NCBI RefSeq assembly: GCF_000737315.1 | Contig: NZ_JMCB01000010.1 | Location: 124,001-188,000, forward strand | DNA: 64,000 nt | Direction of reading: 5' to 3' | Source of the DNA: Hyalangium minutum | GTDB lineage: Bacteria; Myxococcota; Myxococcia; Myxococcales; Myxococcaceae | In this document: positions 45,516 to 61,145 of the stretch, in pieces | Layout of the letters: every line of letters begins with the position of its first letter | How positions within the stretch are numbered: position 1 is the first letter of the stretch | The notes under the pieces: model-generated | What the model was told of the DNA's origin: nothing | The model's database searches: none | What the model saw: the letters and a program-made list of their open reading frames with translations, nothing else | Made by a program: the position numbers and the translations under genes

Positions 45516-45601
45516 AGCCCACATGGGCTTTCATGGTATTCATGATATTCATGAAAGGGATTGAAGCGGAGGCTCCCCAGGGCCCCCGCCCCACCCTGGG
45601 G
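45516..45601. promoter_or_regulatory. Cluster of palindromes and 9-bp tandem repeats upstream of the NLR-like gene
   Basis: AGCCCA-CA-TGGGCT (45516-45529); TTCATGGTA / TTCATGATA / TTCATGAAA (45530-45556); CCCCAGGG...CCCTGGGG (45575-45601). Confidence 0.5.
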
Positions 45602-45611
45602 GATGATCCGC

Positions 45612-48600
45612 ATGAGCGAGTCCCACGTGGATGTGCTGATCGTCACGGCGCTCAAGGAAGAGCTCGACGCAGTCCTGGAGCTCAGGTTCGACGGCCGGGG
45701 GCGCGACGGCTGGACGAGCGCGCGTGACCCGCATGGCTTCCCCTATTCCTGGCGCACCCTCCCCAACCAGCAGGGAGAGAACCTCCACGTGGCGGCGGCG
45801 TGGTCCGGCGACATGGGAGAGACGGCGGCGGCGGCCCGCTCCATCGCGCTCATCCAGCAGCTGAACCCCGCGTGCATCGCCATGAGCGGCATCTGCGCGG
45901 GCCGCCGCGGCAAGGTGTCCCTGGGGGACGTCATCGTGGCTGACCGGATCTTCAGCTACGACCACGGCAAGCTCGTCGCTGCGCACGAGGGCCACGGAGC
46001 GGACCTCTTCCACGACATCACCACCTACAACCTGGACCCGGCCTGGAGGATGGACGCGGCGTTCTTCGCGGAGGAGTTCACCCAGGCCCCGGGGCTCGAG
46101 AAGACGCGTCCTCTCTCCCTGGAGGCCCAACAGCGGTGGTTCCTCCGGGCGCTGGAGACCCATGAGCGCGGAGCCGCCCCCGCCCCCAACGAGCACCCCG
46201 ACTGGCGAAGCCAGTGCCCGGACCTTGCCTCCTGCATTCGCGCGCTGCGGAAGTCCGGACTCATTGATCCGACGCCCGGCAAGCTCCAGCTGACGGAGAA
46301 AGGCCGGGGGCTGGCCGCCGAGGAGCGACTGATCGATCCCGACGGAAAGAGGACCGACGGGCCCTTCCGCGTCCACGTGGCGCCCATCGCCACGGGCAAG
46401 ACCGTCCAGGAGGATCCGGAGCTGTTCGAGCGGCTGAGCCGGCACGTGCGCAAGGTGCTGGGCGCGGAGATGGAGGCCACGGCCATGGGATTCGTGGCCG
46501 AGCAGCTCGGCCGGCGCCTGCTCATCGCCAAGGCGGTCTCGGACTACGCCGACCACGACAAGGACGATGCCTTCCGCGACTTCGCCTGCCACGCGTCGGC
46601 TTCGTTCCTGCTGGCGTTCCTGCGCAAGCACCAGCGGCCGCACCCGTCCGCTTCGGCCTCGGGCTCCAGCGTCAAGGAGAGCCGTCCACCCGCGCTCCGG
46701 AGGGCCCGCGAGGACAGGCGCCAGGACGAGTTCCTGGCGCGAGTCGAGCAGGTCTGCGCCCTCCGCCATGCTCCCGGGACGCAGATCAAGCGCAAGCTCT
46801 TCGACGAGGCACCGGCTCCCTTCAACGAGCTGCTCGAAGTGACGATGTCTGAGGGAGGCGTCATCCAGAGCCTCCCCGTGGCCGCGCTCGAGCAACCCCT
46901 GACGGCCGAGCTGCTGACGGCCTTCCTGGACAGCATCCACGCCGAGTACCGGAAGCGGGAGCCCACGGTCATCTCGACGCTCGTCCACTCGGGCCCGTCA
47001 GCCCCCGAGGCGCTGTTGCGCCAGGCCCGCGCGCAGCAGGTGCGGCTGATCAGCTTCAGCGAGTACCAGGGGCTCTACGACTTCTCCAGCTACCTGCAGT
47101 GGCAGACCACCCGGCTGGAGAACGATCCCATCTATCCGCCCTCGCTCTACGTGGAGCAACAGGGCCAGGTGAGCATCGGGGGAGGAGCGCCCGAGCGCAC
47201 GCAGGACGTGCTCCAGAAGCTGCTCGAAGTCCTCAACTCGCCCCACACGCGCTTCGCGCTCATCCTGGGAGACTTCGGCGCGGGGAAGACGTTCCTGCTC
47301 CACGAGCTGGCCCGGCGGATGGCTCCCGAGAAGGCCCTGGTGCCCGTGCTCATCGAGATGCGCTCGCTCCAGAAGCACGTCTCGCTCAAGCAGCTCATCG
47401 CGCAGCACTTCGCCGCGGCGGATCTCGGGCGGCTGGAGCCCGACAAGTTCCTCTACCTGCTCCGCTCGGGGCGGATCGCGCTCCTGTTCGACGGCTTCGA
47501 CGAGCTCGCGCTCCGCGTGACGTACGACCAGGTGATGGAGCACTTCAACACCATCATCGAGGCCGTCCAGGGAGACGCCAAGGTCGTCATCACGAGCCGC
47601 ACGCAGCACTTCCTGACGGACCAGCAGGTCAAGCGCCAGTTGGGAGAGCGCGCCGCCCTGCTCCCGGGCTACCGGCTCATCGAGCTGGAGCGCTTCAGCG
47701 AGCAGCAGGTCTGGCGCTTCCTGAAGCAGAAGCTGGGGAACCCCGCCGCCGCGGACGAGCGGATGAAGCTCCTCAAGGGCATCGATGATCTCCTCAGCCT
47801 GGCGGAGAACCCCCGCATGCTGAGCTTCATCGCGGAGCTGGAGGAGAGCACGCTCCGTGAGGCCCTCGCCAAGTCGGGCAAGCTCACCAAGGCGCACATC
47901 TACAAGGTCCTCATCCAGCGGTGGATCGACGGAGAGGTCCGCCGGATCCATCCTTCGGGAGCGCTCAAGGGACTGGATCAGCGGCAGATCTTCCGGGGCG
48001 CCACCGAGCTGGCGCTGCTGCTGTGGGAGCGGACAGACCGGTTCGTGGACATGCGCGAGCTGCCGGCGGCGATCCTCGAGGCCGTCAACGCCTACGGCCA
48101 GCACAAGCTCGATCGCGAGGTCATCCGCCACCAACTGGGCTCGGGCTCGCTCATGGTGCGAGACGCGGAGGGACGCTTCTCGTTCATCCACCAGTCCATC
48201 ATGGAGTGGTTCGTCGCCGCGGAGGCCGCGCAGGAGATCCACCACAGCAAGGCCCCCACCGTCCTGGGGCGGAGGGAGATGAGCGAGCTGATGGCGGAGT
48301 TCTTCGTCACCCTCTCGCAGCCCGAGCTGGCGCGGCGCTGGGCCGAGGCCAAGGCGGCCTCCGCGGAGAGTGACATCCTCCGGGGGAACGCGCTGAAGGT
48401 GCTGCGCCAGTTCTCCAAGCTTCAGCTGGAGCCGCGCGCGAGCACCGGGGCCACGCCCTCGCGCAACCTGGAGCGCAGCGATCTGCACGGCCAGGATCTC
48501 TCCGGGGAGGATCTGCGCCGGGCCAACTTGAGCCGAGCCAACCTCTCGGGGGCCACGCTGGTGAACGCCAATCTGGTCGAGGCCCGCCTGGGCCAGGCCA

Positions 48601-50768
48601 ACCTCAAGCGGGCCAACCTGGGGCAGGCGGTCCTGCGCGGCGCGGACCTCGCGGGCGCCGATCTGACGGGGGCGCGCCTGCTCGGGGCCGATCTGCGCGG
48701 CGCCCGGCTGCAGGGGGCGAGCCTGCACGGCGCCAAGCTCGTGGGCGCCCGGCTGGACTCCCTGGAGGACCTCCGGCTGTTCGGGGCGGCGCTGCCCGTC
48801 CCCAAGAACATCACCCCGACCCTGGGGCTCGCCTCACCGCTCCGGGCCGTCGTCTTCAGCCCAGCCGGCGAGTACCTGGCGACAGCCCATGCCGACGGCA
48901 CAGTCCGCCTGTGGGATGCCGAGACGGGCCACTGCCAGCGCGTCTTCGAGGGCCACCTGGACGCCAGCTCCGGGCTCGCCTTCAGCCGGGATGGACGGCT
49001 GCTGGCCTCCGGCACCGATGCGGGGGCCGTCATCCTCTGGAGTGTGGAGCAGCTCCGTCCTCTCCACACCCTGTTGGGCCACAAGCAGGGCGTCACCGGA
49101 GTGGCCTTCAGTCCGGACAGCCTGCTGTTGGCGTCGAGCTCTCTGGACGGCACCCTCATCCTCTGGAGCGTGGAGGAGGGGCGCTCCGTGCGCCCCCTCG
49201 AGGGCCACAAGGGCGCCGTGCTGAGCGTGGCCTTCAGCCCGGACGGCAAGACGGTGGCCTCGGGCTCCGACGACCGGACCCTCACCCTCTGGCACGCGCA
49301 CCAGGGCCGGCCCCTGCACACGCTGTCCGGGCACTGGGGCTCCATCCTCTCCCTGGCCTTCAGCCCGGACGGCCGGCTGCTCGCCTCGGGCTCGGAGGAC
49401 AAGACCGTCATCCTCTGGAACGTGGAAGACGCCAAGCCGCTGCGCATGCTCGAGGGACACGCGGAGGCCATCCGGAGCGTGACCTTCAGCCCGGACGGCA
49501 GGACGCTGGCCTCGGGCTCGGAGGACAAGAGCACCATCCTCTGGAGCATCAAGCAGGCCATGGCGCTGACTTCGCTCAAGTCGCACACAGGCCCTGTCTG
49601 GAGCGTGGCCTTCAGCCCGGATGGAAAGACGCTGGCCTCGGGCTCCGACGACAAGACCGTCATCCTCTGGAGCGTGGAGCACGCCAAGCCACTGCGTGCC
49701 CTGCAGGACCATTCGAGCGCCGTACGCAGCGTGGCCTTCAGCGCGGACGGGAGGATCCACGCCCAGGGTTTCGAGGACGGCACCCTCATTCTCTGGAGCG
49801 TGCCGCAGGCGCGGCTGCTGCGCCTGCTCCAGGGCCACACCGAGTCCATCTCGAGCATCGCCATCAGCCCGGACGGCAAGACGCTGGCCTCCGCGACCCA
49901 GGGAGGACGCATCCTCTTATGGAGCGTGGAGCACGCCCGGCCCCTCAGCACGCTCCAGGGACACCGGGAGGCCGTGCTCAGCATGGCCTTCAGCCCGGAT
50001 GGCAAGACGCTGGTCTCCGGCTCCAAGGACCAGACGCTGAGCTTCTGGAACGTGAGCGTGGGCACGCAGCTTCGCAGCCGCCAGCTGCACCGCGGCAGCG
50101 TCACCACGGTGGCCTTCAGCCCGGATGGCAAGACGCTGGCCTCGGGCTCGGATGACCGGAACATCCTGCTGTGGAGCGCGGAGCAGGGCACCTACCAGCG
50201 CACCCTCCGGGGACACTCGGGCCCGGTGCGCAGCATCACGTTCAGCCCGGACGGCACCACCCTGGCCTCGGGCTCGGATGAGGAGCCCCTGCTGCTGTGG
50301 AGCACGGATCAGGGACGCATCCTCCGCACCTTCTCAGGTACCTCCGGCTTCACCCTCAGCGTGGCGTTCAGTCCGGATGGCAAGGCGCTGGCCTCGGGCT
50401 CGGACAGCGGGGCGCTGGTGCTGTGGAGCGTGGAGAAGGGCAGCCGCCTGCGCACCTTCCCGGGAAACCGCGGCAGCGTCCTCCACGTGGCGTTCGGCCC
50501 GGAGGGTGCCTGGCTGTCCTCGGCCTCCGATGACGGGACGGCGCGCTACTGGGAGAGCGCCACGGGGCGGCCACTGGCCACGTTCCTGGGGCACCTGGAT
50601 GGGTGCGTCGCGTTCCGGCCGGATGGGCACTTCAAGAGCGGAGGCGATGTCACAGGCATCTTCTGGCACGCCGTGAGCCTGTGCCGCTTCGAGCCCGGCG
50701 AGCTGGATCCCTACCTGCCGACGCCGCTGCGGCTGACGGACAAGGATCCGCTCTTCACCAAAGCCTGA
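45612..50768 (+). CDS. NLR-like protein: PNP/MTA-nucleosidase + inactive-REase-like segment + NACHT NTPase + pentapeptide repeats + WD40 repeats
   Basis: GICAG...LGDVIV, EMEATA and KAVSDYAD (PNP_UDP fold); GDFGAGKT and LLFDGFDE (Walker A/B); A(N/D)LxG pentapeptides; 14 repeats of GH...VAFSPDG..LASGS.D.T..LW. Confidence 0.93.
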   Translation: MSESHVDVLIVTALKEELDAVLELRFDGRGRDGWTSARDPHGFPYSWRTLPNQQGENLHVAAAWSGDMGETAAAARSIALIQQLNPACIAMSGICAGRRGKVSLGDVIVADRIFSYDHGKLVAAHEGHGADLFHDITTYNLDPAWRMDAAFFAEEFTQAPGLEKTRPLSLEAQQRWFLRALETHERGAAPAPNEHPDWRSQCPDLASCIRALRKSGLIDPTPGKLQLTEKGRGLAAEERLIDPDGKRTDGPFRVHVAPIATGKTVQEDPELFERLSRHVRKVLGAEMEATAMGFVAEQLGRRLLIAKAVSDYADHDKDDAFRDFACHASASFLLAFLRKHQRPHPSASASGSSVKESRPPALRRAREDRRQDEFLARVEQVCALRHAPGTQIKRKLFDEAPAPFNELLEVTMSEGGVIQSLPVAALEQPLTAELLTAFLDSIHAEYRKREPTVISTLVHSGPSAPEALLRQARAQQVRLISFSEYQGLYDFSSYLQWQTTRLENDPIYPPSLYVEQQGQVSIGGGAPERTQDVLQKLLEVLNSPHTRFALILGDFGAGKTFLLHELARRMAPEKALVPVLIEMRSLQKHVSLKQLIAQHFAAADLGRLEPDKFLYLLRSGRIALLFDGFDELALRVTYDQVMEHFNTIIEAVQGDAKVVITSRTQHFLTDQQVKRQLGERAALLPGYRLIELERFSEQQVWRFLKQKLGNPAAADERMKLLKGIDDLLSLAENPRMLSFIAELEESTLREALAKSGKLTKAHIYKVLIQRWIDGEVRRIHPSGALKGLDQRQIFRGATELALLLWERTDRFVDMRELPAAILEAVNAYGQHKLDREVIRHQLGSGSLMVRDAEGRFSFIHQSIMEWFVAAEAAQEIHHSKAPTVLGRREMSELMAEFFVTLSQPELARRWAEAKAASAESDILRGNALKVLRQFSKLQLEPRASTGATPSRNLERSDLHGQDLSGEDLRRANLSRANLSGATLVNANLVEARLGQANLKRANLGQAVLRGADLAGADLTGARLLGADLRGARLQGASLHGAKLVGARLDSLEDLRLFGAALPVPKNITPTLGLASPLRAVVFSPAGEYLATAHADGTVRLWDAETGHCQRVFEGHLDASSGLAFSRDGRLLASGTDAGAVILWSVEQLRPLHTLLGHKQGVTGVAFSPDSLLLASSSLDGTLILWSVEEGRSVRPLEGHKGAVLSVAFSPDGKTVASGSDDRTLTLWHAHQGRPLHTLSGHWGSILSLAFSPDGRLLASGSEDKTVILWNVEDAKPLRMLEGHAEAIRSVTFSPDGRTLASGSEDKSTILWSIKQAMALTSLKSHTGPVWSVAFSPDGKTLASGSDDKTVILWSVEHAKPLRALQDHSSAVRSVAFSADGRIHAQGFEDGTLILWSVPQARLLRLLQGHTESISSIAISPDGKTLASATQGGRILLWSVEHARPLSTLQGHREAVLSMAFSPDGKTLVSGSKDQTLSFWNVSVGTQLRSRQLHRGSVTTVAFSPDGKTLASGSDDRNILLWSAEQGTYQRTLRGHSGPVRSITFSPDGTTLASGSDEEPLLLWSTDQGRILRTFSGTSGFTLSVAFSPDGKALASGSDSGALVLWSVEKGSRLRTFPGNRGSVLHVAFGPEGAWLSSASDDGTARYWESATGRPLATFLGHLDGCVAFRPDGHFKSGGDVTGIFWHAVSLCRFEPGELDPYLPTPLRLTDKDPLFTKA
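48840..50560 (+). repeat. WD40 tandem repeat array, about 126-nt period, 14 units
   Basis: Recurrent nucleotide blocks such as TTCAGCCCGGA(C/T)GG and GCCTCGGGCTC at 42-codon spacing. Confidence 0.9.
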
Positions 50769-53370: not shown

Positions 53371-54363
53371 TTAGCCTCCCGTTACGTATCGTTGGCGAAG
53401 AGCTTCGGCGCGCTTCGCCAACTTGTCCCGTAAAGACTGGGGACGCAGGATCTCTGCTTCTTCACCAAAGCTCAGCACCCAAGCCTCCACCTCAGGGCAC
53501 ACGCACACGTCGAGGTGGATGTGAACCTCACCACCCAAGACCACCGCTCGCTGTGAGCGATGCCAGCGATGACTCTTCACATGCGCGGCCCAGCGCGCAT
53601 GCAGCTTCAGTTCCACATGCTCGACGGGCTGGTCTTCCATCATGAAGATGCCGAAGCTCCGAGCAAAGACCTGTTCAGGATCGTACTCCGCTTTGGTGGG
53701 GTACTTGAAGGGGCGCCCTTCTGCCTCGGCGCTGCGAATGCGCGAGAAACGGAACGAACGGAGTTCCCCGGTACGCTCACGTCCAAGCAGGTAGAGCTGG
53801 TGGTTGTAGACGGCGAGTGACAGCGGCTCCACGCGTCTTGAGCGGACCACGCTAGCGAAATCCTCGTAATCGATACGAACCGGATACTGCTCCAGAAGTG
53901 CAGCGATGAGTTCATCGAGCTGAGCGCCCTTCTCGGGCAGAGAGATCTCTCCTCCCTGAGACAGGAAAACGAACTTCCGCTCGACCTCGCTGAAATCGCC
54001 ACGCCGACGTGACTGCCGGAGGAGATGGTCGCGCGCATCACTGAAGGCTTTCTGATAGGGCGTCCCTTCGAACAAGGGCCCCAGACTCGCCCCGAAGCTC
54101 GCCCCGATGAGCACTGCGAGCGATGGCGGATCGGAGATTGCCGCAGCATCAAACCGGAAAACCCGGCGACGCCCCTCCTTCACCACCTTCACTCCTGGCA
54201 GACGTGCGATGGCCTTGAGCTGACGATCCGCCGAAACCGGTTGGATGCCGAGCGCTGCGGCAGCGCTGTTCCGATCATGGGACTTCCCGGCCATCAAGTC
54301 GGCGATGAGTTGCACCGTCCGATGGAGTTGGGTGAAGCGCCGCTTCTCCAAGTCGCTGCTCAT
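53371..54363 (-). CDS. WYL domain transcriptional regulator (HTH-WYL-WCX)
   Basis: N-terminal HTH; VRIDY...RRVEPLSL...LYLLG...RSFRFSRI; AWVLSFGEEAEILRPQSLR. GAGGA ribosome-binding site before ATG 54363. Confidence 0.93.
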   Translation of the reverse strand: MSSDLEKRRFTQLHRTVQLIADLMAGKSHDRNSAAAALGIQPVSADRQLKAIARLPGVKVVKEGRRRVFRFDAAAISDPPSLAVLIGASFGASLGPLFEGTPYQKAFSDARDHLLRQSRRRGDFSEVERKFVFLSQGGEISLPEKGAQLDELIAALLEQYPVRIDYEDFASVVRSRRVEPLSLAVYNHQLYLLGRERTGELRSFRFSRIRSAEAEGRPFKYPTKAEYDPEQVFARSFGIFMMEDQPVEHVELKLHARWAAHVKSHRWHRSQRAVVLGGEVHIHLDVCVCPEVEAWVLSFGEEAEILRPQSLRDKLAKRAEALRQRYVTGG

Positions 54364-54482
54364 GATCCTCAAATCCTCTGATGATCCTTAAAGGATCGCA
54401 ATCTATCCGGTGACTTGCTTGCCCCCCAGCGCCGGTTACCTGTGAGACCACGCGTCAGCCTCTCTTTGGGCCTACGCGTCAG

Positions 54483-54896
54483 GTGCCCACGAACCTCATG
54501 GGTGGACCCTTGAGCAAACACCCCTGTGAGGACTGTGGAGAACACATGATCGACTACAATCCCGTACGCGTCCCCTGGCAGGAAGCCATGGACTCCTTGA
54601 AGCCAGCGCTTGACGGTTACCGAAGCCACTGGGACCGGGTCTACATCGGCGTGACGACCAGTCCCGAGGCTCGGTGGGCGCAGCACGCGGGCAACGGTTG
54701 GAACAAGATGCGGGTGCTCTACGAGGCGTTCAATCCATCCATCGCCAAGGAGCTCGAGCAGGATCTGATCGACTACGCCCGGCGGTGCAACTTCCGCGTG
54801 GCCATCGAGAACATCAACCCGGGCGGGGAAGGCATCCAGAGCCACTCACGGACTCACTGCCTCTACGTGCTGGTAGGCAACAAGCAGCAGGCCTGA
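54483..54896 (+). CDS. Small GIY-YIG nuclease-like protein with N-terminal CxxC
   Basis: RVYIGVT...ARWAQH, AKELEQDLI, NINPGG match GIY-YIG Y/R/E/N positions; HPCEDCGEH. Start is GTG 54483 or ATG 54498. Confidence 0.72.
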   Translation: MPTNLMGGPLSKHPCEDCGEHMIDYNPVRVPWQEAMDSLKPALDGYRSHWDRVYIGVTTSPEARWAQHAGNGWNKMRVLYEAFNPSIAKELEQDLIDYARRCNFRVAIENINPGGEGIQSHSRTHCLYVLVGNKQQA

Positions 54897-54905
54897 GGTG
54901 AAGCG

Positions 54906-55418
54906 ATGCGTTACCACTCTTCAGGTCCTGACTTTCTGATTGTCCCCTTTGATTACGTGTCGCACTACAACGCCGTCCAGCGCTTGGTCCGCCCTTGGGA
55001 GGTGGAACACCTCATCCAGCGGAATGCACCTCCCTCGCTGGCTCGGTACAGCCTCCCCGTCGCTGATCAGGTGGCCCAGTGGCTCCGTACCAAGTTCGCC
55101 AACCGCCAACTCTCGTATGCCTCGGACCCGAGCGGCCTGGACTGTTGGTATGCGCCCGCCACGACGCTCCGGCGGCGCGCGGGGGACTGCGAGGACCTCA
55201 CGCTGCTCACAGTCTCGATTCTCCTGGCGGCAGGCGTCTCCGCTCGGGTGGCCATTGGAACACTCCCGGGTGGTGGGCACGCGTGGGTCGAGGGGGCGGA
55301 TGAGCAGAGCGGCTTCCTCATCGAGGCCACCTCGGGCGAAATCCATCGGTACCGCCCCTCCGATTACAACTTGAGCTGGCACATCGATCCCCATCCAGCC
55401 CTGTTGCGTGTTGCATGA
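54906..55418 (+). CDS. Transglutaminase-like (BTLCP/C93-type) cysteine hydrolase, no signal peptide
   Basis: SYASD...WYAPATTL...GDCEDL, GHAWVE, LIEAT; GAGG ribosome-binding site; 9 bp after the GIY-YIG stop. Confidence 0.85.
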   Translation: MRYHSSGPDFLIVPFDYVSHYNAVQRLVRPWEVEHLIQRNAPPSLARYSLPVADQVAQWLRTKFANRQLSYASDPSGLDCWYAPATTLRRRAGDCEDLTLLTVSILLAAGVSARVAIGTLPGGGHAWVEGADEQSGFLIEATSGEIHRYRPSDYNLSWHIDPHPALLRVA

Positions 55419-56475: not shown

Positions 56476-56742
56476 ACCTGACAGAGCGGCATGACGCCAG
56501 CCTACTCGTTGGGTAGGCTGCGCACGGGCGGATCTGGCCGCCCCATCACGCCGAGTTACGCGATGACGGACACCCCCTCCCCCGCCTCTCTCATGCCTGG
56601 GGCTCTCGTCGGCCCCTGGCGAATCAAGGGCTATGCCGGCCGTGGCTCCTATGGCCTGGTCTTCCGGGCCCGGCTCGCCGCACAGCCCGACTCGCCTCCA
56701 GCGGCGTTGAAGATGGCCGTCTTCCCGGAGACCCGCGCTTCC
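56476..56742 (+). repeat. Direct repeat copy 1 (copy 2 at 57750-58017)
   Basis: About 267 bp; by eye 7 substitutions and a 1-nt deletion relative to copy 2. Confidence 0.95.
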
Positions 56743-56780
56743 ATCAAGAGGCCACCTTCCTTCAGGATCTTGAAGTGGAC
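56563..56780 (+). pseudogene. Truncated, frameshifted Ser/Thr kinase 5' fragment
   Basis: MTDTPSPASLMPGALVGPWRIKGYAGRGSYGLVFRA...ALKM, then a 1-nt deletion (CTTCCC-GGAG vs CTTCCCAGGAG). The rest of the catalytic domain is absent. Confidence 0.85.
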
Positions 56781-56900
56781 CCGGGGCGGTAGCCAATGGA
56801 GTTGCACCCAAACGCATGTCGTCAAATGGCTGGGGAGTGATGCGCTAGAGGCTCCTGCCGTCATGGAAGAAAATGCCCCTTGCCTCTCGATGGATGCACC

Positions 56901-57587
56901 ATGAGAACGCTTCTGCCAGTTCTGACCGGTCTTCTCCTTGTCACGTGTGTCAGGAGTCCGGTTCCTCGCCCGCTCCCCCCGTATGCTCCATCCATTAAAT
57001 TCCCGCATGCGTTGAGGTCCCCCGGGCTGCTGCTCGGTCAATCCGAGCAGCGGGTGCGAATGGATGGCGCGATCGTCCAGGCCATGATGATTGCCGCCAA
57101 GGACTTCATCCCGTCACCCTCCGAGCAGTTCCCCTGCTGGACGAAGCCGGAGCACTTTCTTTTCGACGTCATTCGCAAAGGGGACATCATCTTCGTTTCG
57201 ATCTCCCCAGATTACTTTGCTCAAGGGTGTGAGCGATACACCGCGCCGTTGGACTGGGGGGCCAAGTACGCCATCAGCACCGATGGCCGCATCCTCACGC
57301 AGGAAGATGGCTCCGATGATGGGCCCGAATGGGAATCTCCACCCTCATCCCCGGATGCTGGCACGGATGACCACGCAGCCCATCGCCGAGTATACAATCT
57401 CAGCGATCTCGACCGCATGGACTCGGCACCCGTGGAGGACCCGCCGTTTTTTACGCGTCCAGAGTGGCAGGCCCAGCACCCCTGGCCTCCGTCGCGCAAG
57501 CCTCGCACACCCGCGTTGCCCGATGGAGGAACGCCCGATGGAGGCGTTCACTCGGATGGCGGCTCCCCAGCAGTTCCTCCCCGATAA
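56901..57587 (+). CDS. Hypothetical lipoprotein
   Basis: MRTLLPVLTGLLLVTC lipobox-like; Pro/Asp/Gly-rich tail. Confidence 0.75.
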   Translation: MRTLLPVLTGLLLVTCVRSPVPRPLPPYAPSIKFPHALRSPGLLLGQSEQRVRMDGAIVQAMMIAAKDFIPSPSEQFPCWTKPEHFLFDVIRKGDIIFVSISPDYFAQGCERYTAPLDWGAKYAISTDGRILTQEDGSDDGPEWESPPSSPDAGTDDHAAHRRVYNLSDLDRMDSAPVEDPPFFTRPEWQAQHPWPPSRKPRTPALPDGGTPDGGVHSDGGSPAVPPR

Positions 57588-57749: not shown

Positions 57750-58017
57750 ACCTGACAGAGCGGCATGACGCCAGCCTACTCGTTGGGTAGGCTGCGCGAG
57801 GGCGGATCTGGCCGCCCCATCACGCCGAGTTACGCGATGACGGACACCCCCTCCCCCGCCTCTCTCATGCCTGGGGCTCTCGTCGGCCCCTGGCGCATCG
57901 AGGGCTATGCCGGCCGTGGCTCCTATGGCCTGGTCTTCCGGGCCCGGCTCGCCGCACAGCCCGACTCGCCTCCAGTGGCGCTGAAGGTGGCCGTCTTCCC
58001 AGGAGACCCGCGCTTCC
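57750..58017 (+). repeat. Direct repeat copy 2 (5' UTR and start of the intact kinase)
   Basis: See copy 1. Both copies include the palindrome CAGCCTAC-TCGTTGG-GTAGGCTG. Confidence 0.95.
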
Positions 58018-59306
58018 GTCGCGAAGCCACCTTGTTGGAGAAACTCCAGCATTCGTCGGTGCCTCGGCTCCTGGACCAGGGGGAGTGGCATGCTTCGGCC
58101 GACGCCGTTCACCCGTACATCGCCATGCAGTGGATTCACGGCCTGCCGCTATACGAGTGGGCACGCCACCATCCGGTCTCTCCGCGTCAGGCACTCCTGG
58201 TCGTGGCCCAGATAGCCGATGCCCTGGCGCTGTTGCACCAGATGGAAGGCCTGCACCGTGACCTCAAAGGCGACAACATCCTGGTTGACGCTCAAGGCCG
58301 AGCGGTGCTCATCGACTTCGGATCGGGCACTTGGAAAGGGGCGCCGCCTCTGACGCAGAGCCTGATGCCCCCCAACACGCCAGAGTACCGCAGTCCTCAG
58401 GCGCTGCGCTTCCACTGGAAGCACTGGGACACCCTCGAGGCTCGCTACGAGCCGACAGCGGCCGACGACCTGTATGCGCTGGGCGTCACCGCCTACAAAT
58501 TGGTGACGCGCGTCTATCCGCCTCCGGGAACGAGTCCGGAGGACATCAAGCAGCGGCTGCAGACACCGCCTCCCCGGCGTCTGCCCGCGCAGGCGCTCAA
58601 CAGCCGCGTGGGGCCGGAGTTCTCCGCACTCATCGAGCGCATGTTGGCGGAAGTTCCCCAGCAACGTGCTTCCTCACGAGAAGTAGCAGAGGAAGGGATG
58701 ACCACCGCCCGGCAGCTGGGCTCCAGCGCCAACGCTCCGCTCTTCACCGTGGACCGGCCCACTGCTGCAGTTCCCTGCGTGCTCGCTCCCGTTGTGCCAG
58801 CAACCCACTTGGAGCGGCCCACCGCTGCCGCTCCGCCGGCTGCTCCTGCCCGAGCACATATCGAATCCCCAGAGTTCCCTGTGGGCTTGCGCTCCGCGTT
58901 GGCCCCAATCTTGGTGCTCCTCACAGCGCTCAGCGTCGTATGGGTGAGCCATGCTGATCGCCCTGCGTGGCTCACGCCCCTGGAGGAACAGTCAGATGGA
59001 GGGGTTGCTCCGGACGGGGGAACACGCGGACTGGGAGAGGACGCGCTGGCCTCTCGGGTGGATGCCCAGCAAGCCCCTCTGGTCGCCAGGGTCATCTCCG
59101 AAAATCTGCTCAAACAGCCGCTGCCTGGGCAACGCAAGCCTCCTTGCCGCGGTGAAGACGTGGAAGTGATTCATGGGGCCTGCTGGATACTCCGGAAGGG
59201 AGTTCGCCCTCCCTGCGGCGATGATGGGTATCTGTGGCAAGGCGCGTGCTACGTCCCCTTGCTCGGCAACGCGCGAACGCCGACCACCGACAAGCCACAG
59301 CAGTAG
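57837..59306 (+). CDS. Hanks-type Ser/Thr protein kinase with TM helix and Cys-rich extracellular tail
   Basis: GRGSYGLV, VALKV, HRDLKGDNILV, DFG, DDLYALGV; C-terminal PLPGQRKPPC...CW...PPC...W.G.CYVP. Confidence 0.93.
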   Translation: MTDTPSPASLMPGALVGPWRIEGYAGRGSYGLVFRARLAAQPDSPPVALKVAVFPGDPRFRREATLLEKLQHSSVPRLLDQGEWHASADAVHPYIAMQWIHGLPLYEWARHHPVSPRQALLVVAQIADALALLHQMEGLHRDLKGDNILVDAQGRAVLIDFGSGTWKGAPPLTQSLMPPNTPEYRSPQALRFHWKHWDTLEARYEPTAADDLYALGVTAYKLVTRVYPPPGTSPEDIKQRLQTPPPRRLPAQALNSRVGPEFSALIERMLAEVPQQRASSREVAEEGMTTARQLGSSANAPLFTVDRPTAAVPCVLAPVVPATHLERPTAAAPPAAPARAHIESPEFPVGLRSALAPILVLLTALSVVWVSHADRPAWLTPLEEQSDGGVAPDGGTRGLGEDALASRVDAQQAPLVARVISENLLKQPLPGQRKPPCRGEDVEVIHGACWILRKGVRPPCGDDGYLWQGACYVPLLGNARTPTTDKPQQ

Positions 59307-59403: not shown

Positions 59404-60324
59404 CTATTGGCAGAGCCTGCGCATCCAGCGGCGCAACGGTTCTTTGTCGAGAGAGAACCAGCCGGTGCGCTCCTCTAAGAAGAAGGGCTCGAGCAGCAGC
59501 GCCAACTCGCGATATTGGGCCGGGTAGAACTTCTTCTCAGTGTCGATGGTCTCAGGCCACTCGGTGAGGGTGATCAGCAGGCGATCGCCGTCGAGGGGCT
59601 GGAAGGAGACATCCGGGAAGGGGAGCTTCTGGTGCAGGGCCTCGGGGCCACCGAGCTGGCCGAGCAGGGGCTGGCCCAGGAAGGTAAGCCAGTAGGCGCC
59701 TCGGGCACGGGTGCCGATGACCCGGCTCGTGTCTTCGAGGTGGTAGAGATCCAGGCCCAGGTAGCGAGAGAGGAGTGGGAGGAGCTCCCAGCGGGCGGCG
59801 TACCACATGCCATGGGGAGAGATGACGGCGAGGCTGGCGTAGCCGAAGCTGAAGGGCAGCTCGCGTGCGAGTTCCAGGACCAGGGTGCGCAGATGGCCTG
59901 GGCCGCGCTCCATGAGGTACTCGGTGGGAAAGGTAAAAGACACCCCACTGGTCCAACTCTCGTCGTGAGAGAAGTTCGGATCATCGAGCTGCCGGCCCCG
60001 GTACTCGAAGTGGTAACCGCCCACTTCGCTCGCATCCTCCTCGAGATCGACATAGCAGGCGGCAGCCCCCTTGCGCTCAAGGATTTGCCAGCGGATGTGC
60101 GCCCAGCCCTTGTCATCGAGCGGGAGGGTGTCGCCATCGTCCGAGCCGTACCAAGCCAGCGACTGTGGGGGGGTGGCACGGCGGTAAGCCTGCAGGGCCC
60201 GCCACACGGCGGGGGCCACCTCGTGGTGTGAGCTGCGCATGAAGAAGCAGAGAACGACGCCATCGCGGGCCACCGACCTGCCGTACTTGCTCCGCAGGCG
60301 GATGACGGGAATGCTCTCCCTCAT
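59404..60324 (-). CDS. DUF3396 (TsiV-like) immunity protein
   Basis: LCFFM, SFTFPTEYL, LPFSFGYASL, RGAYWLTFLGQPLLGQLGG, W.RR pattern. ATGA overlap with the upstream gene. Confidence 0.8.
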   Translation of the reverse strand: MRESIPVIRLRSKYGRSVARDGVVLCFFMRSSHHEVAPAVWRALQAYRRATPPQSLAWYGSDDGDTLPLDDKGWAHIRWQILERKGAAACYVDLEEDASEVGGYHFEYRGRQLDDPNFSHDESWTSGVSFTFPTEYLMERGPGHLRTLVLELARELPFSFGYASLAVISPHGMWYAARWELLPLLSRYLGLDLYHLEDTSRVIGTRARGAYWLTFLGQPLLGQLGGPEALHQKLPFPDVSFQPLDGDRLLITLTEWPETIDTEKKFYPAQYRELALLLEPFFLEERTGWFSLDKEPLRRWMRRLCQ

Positions 60325-61145
60325 CGAGCCATGCCCCCTTGTGGCGAAATAATCCAGGCTTCCCCCCCAAGCGCCTCCTTGTAGATTTCACCCTGGGTGC
60401 GGCCGAAATAGGCGCTGTCCTCTCGATAACGCGTCCATCGCGGCTCATTGGTCTCAGGACAGGGAAACTTGAAGTCCAGGGTGAGTACGGACCGCAGCAA
60501 GCTGCTGCGGTCGACATGAAGGACGATGTCAGGCTCGATGGTGCGCCACAGTTCACGGGTGCAGCCTTGAGCGATCAGGCGCGCCACCTCTTGCTTGCTG
60601 ACGGGCTCGAGGAACTTCGCGTTGGGGTAGTAGCGGTAGCGCTGCTGGATGCTGAAGGGGGCAGGCCAGAGCTGCTCAAGCACCTGCTGAGCGCATTGGA
60701 AGGCAACGGTATGTTTCAGCTCTCCCAGGTACATGGCGCGGGAGATGGGGACGGCGCAGCCGTCGGCGAACACCTCCTCGCCGCACTCTTGGCGGGTGGG
60801 GGAGCGGTTGCCGAAGAACTGGGAGTTGACCTGGCGCTCGGCCAGCCTGGCGCACTCGACGAGCTGTTCCTCGAGCTCACCTACTGCGTTGTCGTTCTCA
60901 AGCAAGGCAAGCAGTGCGGGGACAGACCGGCCGAGGATGGAGGCTACGGCCGCAGTGGTGGTGGGGGCTGCGGAGCTCCCCCCCGCGATGACGGCGGAGG
61001 CATGGGTCATCTTTGCGGCCGTCTCCGAGTCGAGGCGCAAGTCCCTGCGCGAGGAGCGTTGGGGGGTGGCACAGGCTGCGAGGACAGCACAGGCCATCCA
61101 CAGGTGTACGAGCGTCCAGCGCACGGTTCGGCGGGAGCGGAGCAT
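60321..61145 (-). CDS. Lipoprotein with PD-(D/E)xK (VRR-NUC/TseV-like) nuclease motif; putative toxin
   Basis: Lipobox VLAAC; IEPDIVLH...LDFKFPC; Q...Y..ALG tail; coupled to the DUF3396-like gene. Confidence 0.75.
   Translation of the reverse strand: MLRSRRTVRWTLVHLWMACAVLAACATPQRSSRRDLRLDSETAAKMTHASAVIAGGSSAAPTTTAAVASILGRSVPALLALLENDNAVGELEEQLVECARLAERQVNSQFFGNRSPTRQECGEEVFADGCAVPISRAMYLGELKHTVAFQCAQQVLEQLWPAPFSIQQRYRYYPNAKFLEPVSKQEVARLIAQGCTRELWRTIEPDIVLHVDRSSLLRSVLTLDFKFPCPETNEPRWTRYREDSAYFGRTQGEIYKEALGGEAWIISPQGGMAR

What the first reader, a model, noticed from the sequence alone, without database searches (positions are those of the whole stretch)
53371..55418. Candidate new defence module: WYL regulator divergent from GIY-YIG nuclease + cytoplasmic transglutaminase-like enzyme
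WYL regulators (BrxR, CapW, DriD, PafBC) are established nucleic-acid-sensing switches that often head defence operons. Here one faces a tightly spaced two-gene operon: a minimal CxxC-GIY-YIG protein and a signal-less Cys-His transglutaminase/protease. Both look compositionally foreign. I do not recognise this trio as a named system. The hypothesis is that ssDNA or damage sensing induces a nuclease plus a protein-modifying enzyme acting as effector pair or toxin-antitoxin.
Basis: partly seen in the sequence, partly recalled or inferred. Interest (0 to 1): 0.8.

Follow-up and report, generated by a model that had tools for sequence, protein, structure and literature searches.

The report
WYL-controlled mini nuclease with swappable cargo
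A DNA-damage/phage-sensing type of regulator (WYL) sits back-to-back with a tiny, unusual GIY-YIG-type nuclease gene in a foreign-looking island of a myxobacterial genome; this pair recurs in relatives, but the third gene (a LapG-like cysteine protease) is only one of several interchangeable passengers, so it is a plausible but untested new defence-type module, not a fixed three-gene system.

Summary
The three genes exist and the domain calls are mostly right. They are a wHTH-WYL-WCX regulator (53371-54363, -), a 116-aa divergent GIY-YIG-superfamily protein (54546-54896, +) and a signal-less transglutaminase-fold, LapG-like Cys-His protease (54906-55418, +).

The conserved unit is WYL plus the mini GIY-YIG gene, not the trio.
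- All five WYL orthologue contexts examined at 70% identity or more face a GIY homologue across an intergenic region with an invariant palindrome, GATCCTTNAAGGATC.
- The gene after GIY varies: the protease, an HSDR_N-like protein, DUF2188 (PADLOC candidate PDC-S16 family), DUF6968, or nothing.
- The protease family also occurs without WYL or GIY. GIY homologues also occur alone as low-GC islets, once inside a prophage.
- WYL relatives at 53-58% identity head Bil-like ubiquitin-like operons, one next to IetAS.
- Residues that contact ssDNA in DriD are largely conserved.

Best reading: a horizontally acquired, ssDNA-responsive WYL switch controls a minimal nuclease with modular co-cargo in a conflict island. 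A defence role rests on association only. It is a new variant of the known WYL-regulated defence-cargo theme. The toxin-antitoxin or obligate effector-pair idea is not supported. Interest is moderate.

The parts
53371..54363 (-). wHTH-WYL-WCX transcription regulator, 330 aa from the ATG at 54363 (the mechanical ORF starts at TTG 54372)
   Evidence: Pfam WYL 9e-13 and WCX 2.4e-12. PADLOC WYL 2.5e-28. Best solved relatives are DriD, PafBC and other WYL proteins, E about 5e-8. There are 78 homologue clusters. dN/dS is 0.11-0.13.
54383..54397 (.). Perfect 7-1-7 palindrome GATCCTTAAAGGATC, the likely WYL operator. It lies 19 nt upstream of the WYL start codon.
   Evidence: It occurs once in the 64-kb window, against 0.15 expected even with 2 mismatches allowed. 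It is present once, at the same relative position, in L003-L006 and L019, and absent from the other 97 loci. L020 carries a one-mismatch variant. It is invariant although dS is 0.6-1.2 in the flanking genes.
54359..54392 (.). Direct repeat CTCATGATCCTCAAA / CTGATGATCCTTAAA. It supplies an extra GATCCT half-site that overlaps the WYL start codon.
   Evidence: The columns are conserved in all six aligned loci.
54434..54454 (+). Conserved non-coding block GGTTACCTGTGAGACCACGCG, a candidate promoter or activator-dependent element for the GIY operon. In the window only, it is followed by a 24-nt tandem duplication (54440-54458 / 54464-54482).
   Evidence: Alignment of six orthologous intergenic regions and the repeat found. 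No sigma-70 consensus was found, so the function is inferred.
54546..54896 (+). Minimal (116 aa) divergent GIY-YIG-superfamily protein, a putative nuclease. The Shine-Dalgarno GGAG lies at 54537-54540.
   Evidence: Nine close clusters and 329 representatives by profile search. Of 105 family members, 39 hit Pfam GIY-YIG, 24 T5orf172 and 22 MUG113. The segment Y33-I-G-x-T...R43...H47 aligns to I-TevI Y17/R27/H31. E71 and N89 are at least 90% conserved. The AlphaFold model has pLDDT 88.9. It matches giant-virus 'GIY-YIG domain' models at E 1e-6 and TM 0.69, but no solved structure.
54906..55418 (+). Cytoplasmic transglutaminase-fold cysteine protease of the LapG/BTLCP type, 170 aa. It is a variable cargo gene.
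   Evidence: Pfam Transglut_core 2e-10. The family profile hits the LapG structures 4fgo (2e-8) and 4u65 (1e-5) across the Y-x2-D...D-x-W...GDCED region. Invariant residues are Y71, D74, D79, W81, C95, H125, D132 and E140.

Best explanation
This is a horizontally acquired, locally regulated stress- or phage-inducible operon at the left edge of a conflict island.

Proposed mechanism:
- A homodimeric wHTH-WYL-WCX protein binds the conserved palindrome GATCCTTAAAGGATC, plus an adjacent half-site over its own start codon. From there it controls both its own gene and the divergent operon.
- By analogy with CapW, DriD and PafBC, single-stranded DNA made during DNA damage or phage replication binds the pocket between the WYL and WCX domains and switches the regulator. 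This either releases repression (CapW/BrxR mode) or turns on activation (DriD mode). The sequence does not say which.
- The induced core product is a 116-aa GIY-YIG-superfamily nuclease with no DNA-recognition domain. It probably acts as an oligomer that nicks or cleaves DNA with little sequence specificity.
- In this genome it is co-transcribed with a cytoplasmic LapG-like cysteine protease, a second and independent effector occupying a swappable cargo slot.

Shown here: the gene structures, the domains, the WYL-GIY synteny, the footprinted operator, variability of the third gene, purifying selection, and the island context.

Inferred: the ssDNA signal, the direction of regulation, nuclease activity, and any anti-phage role.
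For: Domains.

WYL-GIY pairing:
- All five WYL orthologue contexts examined at 70% identity or more show it: the window, L003/4/5, L006, L019 and L020. GIY identity falls as low as 45%.
- The operator is footprinted.

ssDNA-contact residues of DriD (PMC10853764) mapped through the alignment:
- Conserved: Y168/Y166, R178/R176, Y192/Y191, R204/R202, R207/R205.
- Conservatively replaced: W206/F204, Y240/F240.
- Changed: S172/A170, R189/H188.

Sister WYL clades head recognised defence-type cargo:
- A Bil-like Ubl/E2-E1/JAB operon in L018 and L021 (BilD 3e-18, BilC 2e-13). L018 is also adjacent to IetA/IetS (IetS 3e-222).
- DUF2188, which equals PDC-S16 (2e-34), in L022.

Island context:
- Window: PDC-M20A/B (5e-101 / 3.5e-126) and a NACHT-WD40 protein with a PNP-like effector.
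- L001: Septu PtuA/PtuB (6e-169 / 1e-90), an AHH toxin with Imm11.
- L019: a TIR-TPR protein.

Other: low GC3 and dN/dS of 0.11-0.28.
Against: - There is no functional data of any kind.
- The GIY protein is below Pfam's threshold on its own and matches no solved GIY-YIG structure. The canonical N-terminal GIY strand is predicted as a helix.
- Neither GIY nor the protease matches a PADLOC model significantly. The best is PDC-S14 at E 0.004.
- GIY homologues survive without the WYL gene. In L001 only a 46-aa WCX remnant is left, and L012-L017 have none at all. Regulation is therefore dispensable and the nuclease is not acutely toxic.
- Myxobacterial genomes are crowded with kinases, STAND proteins and toxin/immunity genes. 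PDC families are only candidates. 'Defence island' context is therefore weak evidence.
- The best solved relatives of the WYL protein are DNA-damage activators (DriD, PafBC), which fits a repair role equally well.
Confidence: 0.45

Rival explanations
1. It is a DNA-damage-response module, not immunity. A DriD/PafBC-like WYL activator senses ssDNA from damage and induces a small GIY-YIG repair or processing nuclease (like Cho, UvrC-N, YhbQ or Slx1), plus a protease that remodels a damage-response protein.
For: - The top solved relatives of the WYL protein are DriD and PafBC, and the ssDNA-contact residues are conserved (PMC10853764).
- SiwR and DriD control adjacent or local damage genes (PMC10693628, PMC9186387).
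- recJ lies 1 kb away. DriD-like motifs were reported upstream of recJ in Caulobacter (PMC9186387).
Against: - Distribution is patchy and the family is tiny: 9 close clusters.
- GC3 is low and foreign, and the pair sits in different chromosomal slots in different genera.
- One GIY homologue lies between the terminase and portal genes of a prophage.
- Sister WYL clades head Bil-like and PDC-S16 cargo.
- The palindrome occurs only once in 64 kb, so no regulon is visible.
Confidence: 0.2
2. The mini GIY-YIG gene is a selfish, homing-endonuclease-like mobile gene that inserts as a single-gene islet. In one lineage it landed next to, or captured, a WYL regulator. The protease and the other third genes are unrelated passengers at an insertion hot spot.
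For: - GIY homologues occur as solitary low-GC3 islets (0.63-0.74 against 0.85-0.95 in the flanks) in unrelated contexts.
- One lies between the terminase and portal genes, with a duplicated terminase 3' end.
- There is a weak PHROG hit to 'homing endonuclease with GIY-YIG motif', E 0.002.
- The genes downstream vary.
Against: - The protein has no DNA-binding or recognition domain, which free-standing GIY-YIG homing enzymes need.
- WYL-GIY linkage and the operator are maintained while GIY diverges to 45% identity, which argues for co-selection.
- There is no match in 50,697 phage genomes or 72,556 plasmids.
Confidence: 0.15
3. This is the first reader's version: the nuclease and the transglutaminase-like enzyme form an obligate effector pair or a toxin-antitoxin couple under WYL control.
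For: The two genes are 9 nt apart and probably co-transcribed. The same pair recurs in L003/4/5 and probably on two further short contigs, judged from matching contig lengths for P0002/P0012 and P0006/P0011.
Against: - GIY relatives at 74-77% identity carry a different third gene: DUF2188 in L006 and a decayed HSDR_N-like gene in L002. More distant ones carry DUF6968 (L001) or an intact HSDR_N-like gene (L019), and L020 has none.
- The protease family occurs with other partners in L007-L010. In 80 viral loci there is no GIY within 5 kb.
- GIY stands alone in L012-L017.
Confidence: 0.07
4. The three genes are chance neighbours with no functional link.
For: Low-GC island genes are often mosaics, and the third gene is clearly exchangeable.
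Against: The divergent WYL-GIY arrangement and its operator are conserved in six distinct loci (two of them, L003 and L006, with extra or cut copies) across dS greater than 1.
Confidence: 0.05

Closest known systems
CapW / BrxR-type wHTH-WYL-WCX repressors of defence systems (CBASS, BREX and defence islands; PMC11662680, PMC9122601)
   Same: The three-domain architecture. The position next to, and divergent from, the cargo it presumably controls. A palindromic operator close to its own start. Sister clades sit next to Bil-like, IetAS and PDC-S16 genes. The ssDNA-binding residues are conserved.
   Different: The cargo is a mini GIY-YIG protein with or without a LapG-like protease, which is not a recognised system. 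Repressor behaviour was not tested. BrxR itself was not among the sequence hits at E<=1.
DriD (Caulobacter) and PafBC (mycobacteria), ssDNA-activated WYL transcription activators of the DNA-damage response
   Same: They are the best sequence matches among solved structures (E 5e-8 to 2e-7). Five of nine ssDNA-contact residues of DriD are identical and two are conservative.
   Different: Those proteins run chromosomal regulons such as didA and recA. Here only one operator is seen in 64 kb, and the gene sits on a foreign island with patchy distribution.
GIY-YIG nucleases (I-TevI/Seg homing enzymes, UvrC/Cho, Slx1, UPF0213/YhbQ, R.Eco29kI)
   Same: The YIG strand and the Arg and His helix motif align to I-TevI and Slx1. 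Glu and Asn are conserved downstream. Pfam GIY-YIG clan hits are found across the family.
   Different: It is only 116 aa with no accessory DNA-binding domain. An N-terminal strand and a long helix replace the canonical GIY hairpin. An invariant Tyr lies in a C-terminal strand. There is no significant Foldseek match to any solved GIY-YIG structure. The nearest structural neighbours are giant-virus predicted proteins.
LapG / BTLCP (peptidase C93) transglutaminase-like cysteine proteases
   Same: The core Cys-His residues and the preceding Y-x2-D...D-x-W...GDCED region align to the LapG structures.
   Different: There is no signal peptide, whereas LapG is periplasmic. No LapD or LapA partners are present. 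The NCBIfam LapG score is 19.6 against a cut-off of 320. The N-terminal 60 residues are family-specific.
PADLOC candidate families PDC-S14 and PDC-S16 (DUF2188)
   Same: DUF2188 fills the same slot: third gene in L006, first gene in L022. The L022 copy matched PDC-S16, but the L006 copy was not scanned against PADLOC. GIY has a faint hit to PDC-S14 (E 0.004).
   Different: The PDC-S14 hit is not significant and covers only 70 of about 300 profile positions. The PDC families are themselves unvalidated candidates.

Membership tests
wHTH-WYL-WCX regulators (BrxR/CapW/DriD family) | WYL domain followed by a WCX domain | tested here: met
   Pfam WYL 48.5 bits (cut-off 21.8) and WCX 47.4 bits (cut-off 23.9).
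wHTH-WYL-WCX regulators (BrxR/CapW/DriD family) | N-terminal winged HTH DNA-binding domain | tested here: inconclusive
   No Pfam HTH hit. The phmmer alignment to full-length DriD does run from residue 12, through the wHTH region.
wHTH-WYL-WCX regulators (BrxR/CapW/DriD family) | Ligand (ssDNA) pocket residues in the WYL domain | tested here: met
   Five of nine DriD contact residues are identical, two are conservative and two are changed (alignment; residues from PMC10853764). Binding itself was not tested.
wHTH-WYL-WCX regulators (BrxR/CapW/DriD family) | Palindromic operator near its own promoter, with control of the adjacent cargo | tested here: inconclusive
   A conserved 15-bp palindrome was found and footprinted. 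Binding and regulation cannot be tested here.
GIY-YIG nuclease superfamily | Significant match to a GIY-YIG clan profile | tested here: inconclusive
   This protein scores 22.0-22.4 bits against a cut-off of 22.6. Of 105 family members, 39 match GIY-YIG (best 5e-8), 24 T5orf172 and 22 MUG113.
GIY-YIG nuclease superfamily | Catalytic residues: Tyr of the YIG motif, Arg, His or Tyr, metal-binding Glu, and Asn | tested here: met
   Y33, R43 and H47 align to I-TevI Y17, R27 and H31. R43, E71 and N89 are at least 90% conserved in 105 sequences. The equivalence of E71 and N89 is inferred from spacing, not from an alignment.
GIY-YIG nuclease superfamily | N-terminal GIY strand pairing with the YIG strand (canonical beta-hairpin) | tested here: not met
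   The models place a long helix (residues 11-28) before the YIG strand. G24-Y25-R26 is invariant but not predicted as a strand. A C-terminal strand with invariant Y107 may substitute, which is speculation.
GIY-YIG nuclease superfamily | Fold similarity to known GIY-YIG structures | tested here: inconclusive
   No PDB hit below E 0.2 with two confident models. BFVD hits to 'GIY-YIG domain-containing' giant-virus models reach E 1e-6 and 0.015.
LapG/BTLCP (peptidase C93) and Transglut_core | Cys-His(-Asp) catalytic core in the transglutaminase fold | tested here: met
   Transglut_core 41.2 bits (cut-off 23). C95 and H125 are invariant, as are the acidic residues D132 and E140. The profile hits LapG structures at 2e-8.
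LapG/BTLCP (peptidase C93) and Transglut_core | Periplasmic location and LapD/LapA partners (true LapG) | tested here: not met
   No signal sequence. NCBIfam LapG scores 19.6 against 320, and Peptidase_C93 14.5 against 27. No such neighbours are present.
Named anti-phage systems (PADLOC 2.0) | Effector proteins match a system model | tested here: not met
   GIY matches only PDC-S14 at E 0.004 and 0.017, and the protease matches nothing.
Type II toxin-antitoxin pair (GIY + protease) | Obligate co-occurrence of the two genes | tested here: not met
   GIY without the protease: L001, L002, L006, L012-L017, L019 and L020. Protease without GIY: L007-L010 and 80 viral loci.

The most novel reading that the evidence does not exclude
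WYL plus the minimal, non-canonical GIY-YIG protein is an undescribed ssDNA-triggered anti-phage or anti-MGE module of Myxococcota. Its downstream slot recruits interchangeable second effectors: a LapG-like protease, a PD-(D/E)xK HSDR_N-like protein, DUF2188/PDC-S16, or DUF6968. The mini GIY-YIG protein would represent a structurally distinct branch of the superfamily, possibly permuted, that is shared with giant viruses.
Probability: 0.3. Interest if true: 0.65.

Novelty: new variant of a known kind. Interest (0 to 1): 0.45.

Why it matters
- If the pair is a defence module, it adds a very small, WYL-gated nuclease to the list of inducible immune effectors.
- It would also give a natural example of a regulator and core effector with a hot-swappable second effector. 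That bears on how defence islands are assembled.
- The 116-aa protein is a compact GIY-YIG variant with no solved structural relative. It has cousins in giant viruses and protist-like sequences, so a structure and an activity assay would extend what is known of that fold.
- The locus offers a simple test of whether this WYL clade works as a CapW-type repressor or a DriD-type activator.
- It is not a fixed three-gene system, and nothing here shows a phage phenotype.

Tried and rejected
- **CxxC zinc-like motif.** Rejected. It lies upstream of the conserved start, and an in-frame stop precedes the ATG in L003 and L002.
- **Canonical GIY-YIG fold by Foldseek against the PDB.** Two models gave no hit below E 0.2. 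Only BFVD gave GIY-YIG-annotated hits.
- **Wider synteny scan with alignments A2 and A3.** The scan run with A1 found only six genome loci.
- **Viral contigs.** The single-protein scans found no WYL or protease relative. GIY was found once, in a 57-kb prophage-like UViG.
- **Metagenome scan with WYL.** Only one locus was returned.
- **Isolated phages and plasmids.** There were no tblastn matches for GIY (phages and plasmids), the protease (phages) or WYL (plasmids).
- **P0014 context look-up.** Nothing on record.
- **Promoters, terminators and RNAs.** The sigma-70 scan found 0 promoter sites, and the 1 terminator-like site (inside the WYL gene) is no more than the shuffles give. No Rfam family or tRNA lies near the locus.
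- **Two eye-spotted GIY-like small ORFs.** These are the L010 136-aa ORF upstream of a protease homologue and the L022 90-aa ORF after DUF2188. Neither could be verified: 0.8 and 10 bits to the family profile, and no PDB hit for the L022 ORF.
- **Literature.** No paper was found describing a WYL and small GIY-YIG pair.
Full report
**1. What is at the coordinates**

Three real genes occupy 53371-55418.

(a) The regulator lies on the minus strand. The mechanical ORF is 53371-54372, starting at TTG, but the likely start is the ATG at 54363 (MSSDLEK...). It carries Pfam WYL (9e-13) and WCX (2.4e-12) domains and matches PADLOC's WYL model at 2.5e-28. Among solved structures its best sequence matches are Caulobacter DriD (9pfq, 8tp8, 7u02), mycobacterial PafBC (7p5x) and another WYL protein (9cu3), all at E about 5e-8 to 3e-7. 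The DriD alignment spans residues 12-318.

(b) The small gene lies on the plus strand. The mechanical ORF 54483-54896 (137 aa) gives a sub-threshold Pfam GIY-YIG hit of 22.0 bits against a cut-off of 22.6.

(c) Nine nucleotides downstream, 54906-55418 encodes a 170-aa protein with Transglut_core (2.2e-10) and CEP76-peptidase (4e-9) hits. Its N-terminus has no hydrophobic stretch.

All three genes are under purifying selection, with dN/dS of 0.11-0.28 against metagenomic orthologues.

**2. Corrections to the observation**

- All nine homologues begin M-I-D/E..., which corresponds to the ATG at 54546.
- That ATG is preceded by GGAG at 54537-54540.
- In L003 and L002 the stop-to-stop frame opens only 9 nt before the ATG.
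- The upstream region is conserved as DNA, not as codons.

The protein is therefore 116 aa.

The 'compositionally foreign' remark is right but too narrow. GC3 is 0.88-0.94 for every gene left of 53.35 kb, including recJ and an OMP beta-barrel gene. It is 0.66-0.85 from the WYL gene to the end of the window. The trio therefore sits at the left edge of an island more than 10 kb long.

**3. What the small protein is**

Its close family is tiny, with nine 90%-identity clusters, all myxobacterial or metagenomic. A profile search of 1.84 billion representatives finds 329 relatives at E<=1e-3. Most are stand-alone proteins of 110-120 aa. A few are tandem duplications, and some are C-terminal domains of long, low-complexity, eukaryote-like proteins.

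Of 105 members scanned one by one, 39 hit Pfam GIY-YIG (best 5e-8), 24 T5orf172 and 22 MUG113, all families of the GIY-YIG clan.

Conserved residues support a nuclease active site.
- The segment V-Y33-I-G-V-T...R43-W...H47 aligns residue for residue with I-TevI Y17, G19, R27 and H31, and with Slx1.
- G35, T37, P40, R43, E71, L74, N89, G93, G94 and Y107 are at least 90% conserved across the 105 sequences.
- E71 and N89 lie where the metal-binding Glu and the structural Asn of GIY-YIG enzymes would be expected. That equivalence is my inference from spacing.

The fold is less clear.
- Two confident AlphaFold models (pLDDT 84.6 and 88.9) agree on a beta-alpha-beta-alpha-beta-alpha-beta topology. 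A long helix (residues 11-28) sits where the canonical GIY strand should be.
- Neither model matches any solved structure (best E 0.2-0.4).
- Against predicted viral structures, the better model hits 'GIY-YIG domain-containing' proteins of Yasminevirus (E 1e-6, TM 0.69) and CroV (E 0.015), and a Klosneuvirus protein (E 3e-5).

My conclusion is that this is a divergent, minimal branch of the GIY-YIG superfamily. The catalytic half-motif is intact, the N-terminal half is non-canonical, and there is no DNA-recognition domain.

**4. What the third protein is**

The family has 17 clusters. Invariant residues are C95 (in GDCED), H125 (in GHAW), D132, E140, and an upstream set of Y71, D74, D79, W81 and P84. 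A family profile matches the LapG structures 4fgo (2e-8) and 4u65 (1e-5) across exactly that upstream region and the catalytic Cys.

It is therefore a cytoplasmic LapG/BTLCP-like cysteine protease, not a cross-linking transglutaminase. It is not LapG itself, because NCBIfam LapG scores 19.6 against a cut-off of 320.

**5. Does the trio recur?**

The pair does. The trio recurs only partly.

| Locus | WYL identity | GIY identity | Gene after GIY |
|---|---|---|---|
| L003/L004/L005 | 86-89% | 72% | protease (76%; 70% on the cut copy in L005) |
| L006 | 76% | 74% | DUF2188 |
| L019, Archangium violaceum | 75% | 51% | 351-aa protein, weak HSDR_N (PD-(D/E)xK) hit |
| L020 | 70% | 45% | no small third gene |
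| L002 | only the WYL start at the contig edge | 77% | decayed copy of the 351-aa gene |
| L001/L011, another A. violaceum | reduced to a 46-aa WCX remnant | 61% | DUF6968 |

Two more protease-containing trios are likely, judged from matching contig lengths: P0002 with P0012, and P0006 with P0011.

The two cargo genes also occur apart from each other.
- The protease family occurs without WYL or GIY in Archangium gephyra (L007) and in L008/L009, where a conserved 240-267-aa protein precedes it and an HTH_3/Peptidase_M78 pair lies nearby. It also occurs in an integrase/PrimPol/ParB element (L010).
- 108 TGase-core relatives lie on viral contigs. None of the 80 fetched has a GIY-family gene within 5 kb.
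- GIY homologues at 50-60% identity occur without any WYL gene in Myxococcus, Cystobacter, Corallococcus, Archangium minus and a Myxococcota MAG. They are always low-GC3 islets (0.63-0.74 against 0.85-0.95 in the flanks). In one case the gene lies between the terminase and portal genes of a 57-kb prophage-like UViG.

The conserved unit is therefore WYL plus GIY. The slot after GIY is a cargo position that turns over even among GIY proteins 74-79% identical.

**6. The regulatory region**

Between the two start codons (182 nt) lies a perfect palindrome, GATCCTTAAAGGATC, at 54383-54397. An additional GATCCT half-site overlaps the WYL start codon.
- The palindrome occurs once in the 64-kb window, against 0.15 expected even with two mismatches allowed.
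- It occurs once, at the same place, in each of L003-L006 and L019, and in none of the other 97 loci held.
- L020 has a one-mismatch version.
- It is invariant although synonymous divergence in the flanking genes is 0.6-1.2.

A second conserved block, GGTTACCTGTGAGACCACGCG (54434-54454), lies on the GIY side. It may be a promoter element. No sigma-70 consensus is present.

This layout matches BrxR and CapW, which bind inverted repeats near their own start (PMC9122601). It is also compatible with a DriD-type activator site about 50-60 nt upstream of a start site in the second block.

**7. What the WYL clade does elsewhere**

The 53-58% identical relatives (L018, and L021 from a Hyalangium MAG) are divergent from an operon of DUF2604 (a ubiquitin-like protein), Metal_CEHH/Y4jH, and a Prok-E2_C-ThiF fusion, with a JAB gene present in L021. 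The PADLOC similarities are to BilD (3e-18) and BilC (2e-13). In L018 the other flank is a full IetA/IetS system (IetS 2.8e-222).

A 45% identical relative (L022) is divergent from DUF2188, which matches PADLOC PDC-S16 over its full length (2.4e-34). DUF2188 also follows GIY in L006 and lies two genes after the protease in L007.

Conflict genes also surround the GIY loci.
- L001: Septu PtuA/PtuB (5.6e-169 / 1.2e-90), Uma2 (PDC-S03), and an AHH toxin with Imm11.
- L019: a TIR-TPR protein.
- The window: PDC-M20A/B (5e-101 / 3.5e-126; B is Pfam TsiV), an AAA_35-like 819-aa protein, and upstream a 1735-aa protein combining a PNP-like effector, NACHT and WD40 repeats.

This is guilt by association. 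The PDC families are unvalidated, and myxobacterial genomes are dense in such genes.

**8. The signal**

The residues of DriD that contact ssDNA are listed in PMC10853764. I mapped them through the alignment, in which chain 9pfq is numbered DriD +4.

| DriD residue | Window WYL residue |
|---|---|
| Y168 | Y166 |
| R178 | R176 |
| Y192 | Y191 |
| R204 | R202 |
| R207 | R205 |
| W206 | F204 |
| Y240 | F240 |
| S172 | A170 |
| R189 | H188 |

Five residues are identical, two are aromatic replacements and two are changed. CapW, DriD, PafBC and SiwR all bind ssDNA (PMC11662680, PMC9186387, PMC11804915, PMC10693628). ssDNA is therefore the most likely ligand, but this is an inference.

**9. Mechanism and rivals**

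My preferred model (confidence 0.45) is as follows. The WYL dimer sits on the palindrome. ssDNA from damage or phage replication flips it. The mini nuclease is then expressed, along with whatever cargo follows it, here a LapG-like protease. The direction of control, repressor or activator, is undecided.

The A. violaceum strain that lost its WYL gene and the palindrome but kept an intact GIY gene (L001) shows that GIY is not acutely toxic when deregulated, or else that it is silent without an activator.

The rivals are:
- a DNA-damage repair module (0.2);
- a selfish, homing-endonuclease-like gene with a captured regulator (0.15);
- chance neighbours (0.05), refuted by the conserved arrangement.

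**10. Novelty and score**

No PADLOC 2.0 model, Pfam architecture or paper found here describes a WYL and mini-GIY-YIG pair. The regulatory logic is the known theme of a WYL regulator heading defence cargo. What is new is the cargo, its modular downstream slot, and the structurally unusual GIY-YIG branch. I rate it a new variant of a known kind with interest 0.45. It is a clean and testable locus, but it is not the fixed three-gene system proposed, and there is no functional evidence.

Noticed in passing
window 56476-56758 and 57750-58033: A 285-bp direct repeat at 97% identity. It is a duplicated 5' end of the Ser/Thr kinase gene (57765-59306). The two copies flank a very low-GC 235-aa ORF (56880-57587) with no family hits, which looks like an insertion that carried or regenerated the target gene's 5' end.
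   Followed up: partly
window 59404-60324 (-) and 60321-61145 (-): An overlapping gene pair that matches PADLOC candidate system PDC-M20B (3.5e-126) and PDC-M20A (5e-101). The B protein is also Pfam TsiV, a type VI immunity protein for VRR-NUC (6e-55). The 'defence candidate' may therefore really be a toxin/immunity pair.
   Followed up: partly
window 45561-50768 (+): A 1735-aa STAND-like protein. It has an N-terminal nucleoside-phosphorylase-like effector (PADLOC PN-superfamily effector 4e-26, PDC-M60C 1e-39). A pentapeptide-like repeat stretch (seen in the translation only) and about 14 WD40 repeats follow; I take the middle part for a NACHT/NTPase module from the sequence, with no significant family hit (PADLOC mad8 only at 7e-4). 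It resembles an NLR-like immune sensor.
   Followed up: partly
window 54440-54458 and 54464-54482: A 24-nt tandem duplication (CTGTGAGACCACGCGTCAG / CTTTGGGCCTACGCGTCAG) of part of the conserved promoter-like block. It is present only in the window, not in the five orthologous loci.
   Followed up: partly
L012/L017 2184-2753 and 4283-4504: In a Myxococcus sp. prophage (57-kb IMG/VR UViG) the 3' end of the terminase large-subunit gene is duplicated. The copies lie around an insertion that carries a DUF11/TSP_3 protein and the GIY homologue, just ahead of the portal gene.
   Followed up: partly
L022 6344-6616 (-): The 90-aa ORF after DUF2188 (PDC-S16), divergent from a 45% identical WYL gene, shows a GIY-x10-YIG...R-like motif by eye (WYVYRGV...EVYFGVSQDPERR). 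It scores only 10 bits against the family profile and has no PDB hit. If real, WYL + GIY-like + DUF2188 would recur at greater distance.
   Followed up: partly
L018 291-3148 (-) and 4940-8247 (-); L021 4779-7867: WYL relatives at 53-58% identity head DUF2604 (Ubl) + Metal_CEHH/Y4jH + Prok-E2_C-ThiF (+ JAB) operons with BilC/BilD similarity. In L018 a complete IetA/IetS system lies on the other side.
   Followed up: yes
L001 4600-6635 and 9774-9920: Archangium violaceum Cb vi76 carries a Septu system (PtuA 6e-169, PtuB 1e-90) 3.4 kb from the GIY gene. Its WYL gene is reduced to a 46-aa WCX remnant and the operator is deleted, yet GIY remains intact.
   Followed up: partly
proteins P0119, P0138, P0155, P0157, P0172; BFVD hits: The mini GIY-YIG domain also forms the C-terminus of long, low-complexity, eukaryote-like proteins from metagenomes. 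Its nearest structural neighbours are giant-virus proteins (Yasminevirus, Klosneuvirus, CroV). This suggests a branch shared between Myxococcota and protist or giant-virus gene pools.
   Followed up: no
L007 7128-7931 and L008 7204-7926: Where the LapG-like protease lacks GIY, a conserved Pro-rich protein of 240-267 aa with no family hit precedes it (47% identity between the two genomes). A DUF2381 + Ser/Thr kinase cluster lies upstream in both. This may be an alternative partner.
   Followed up: partly
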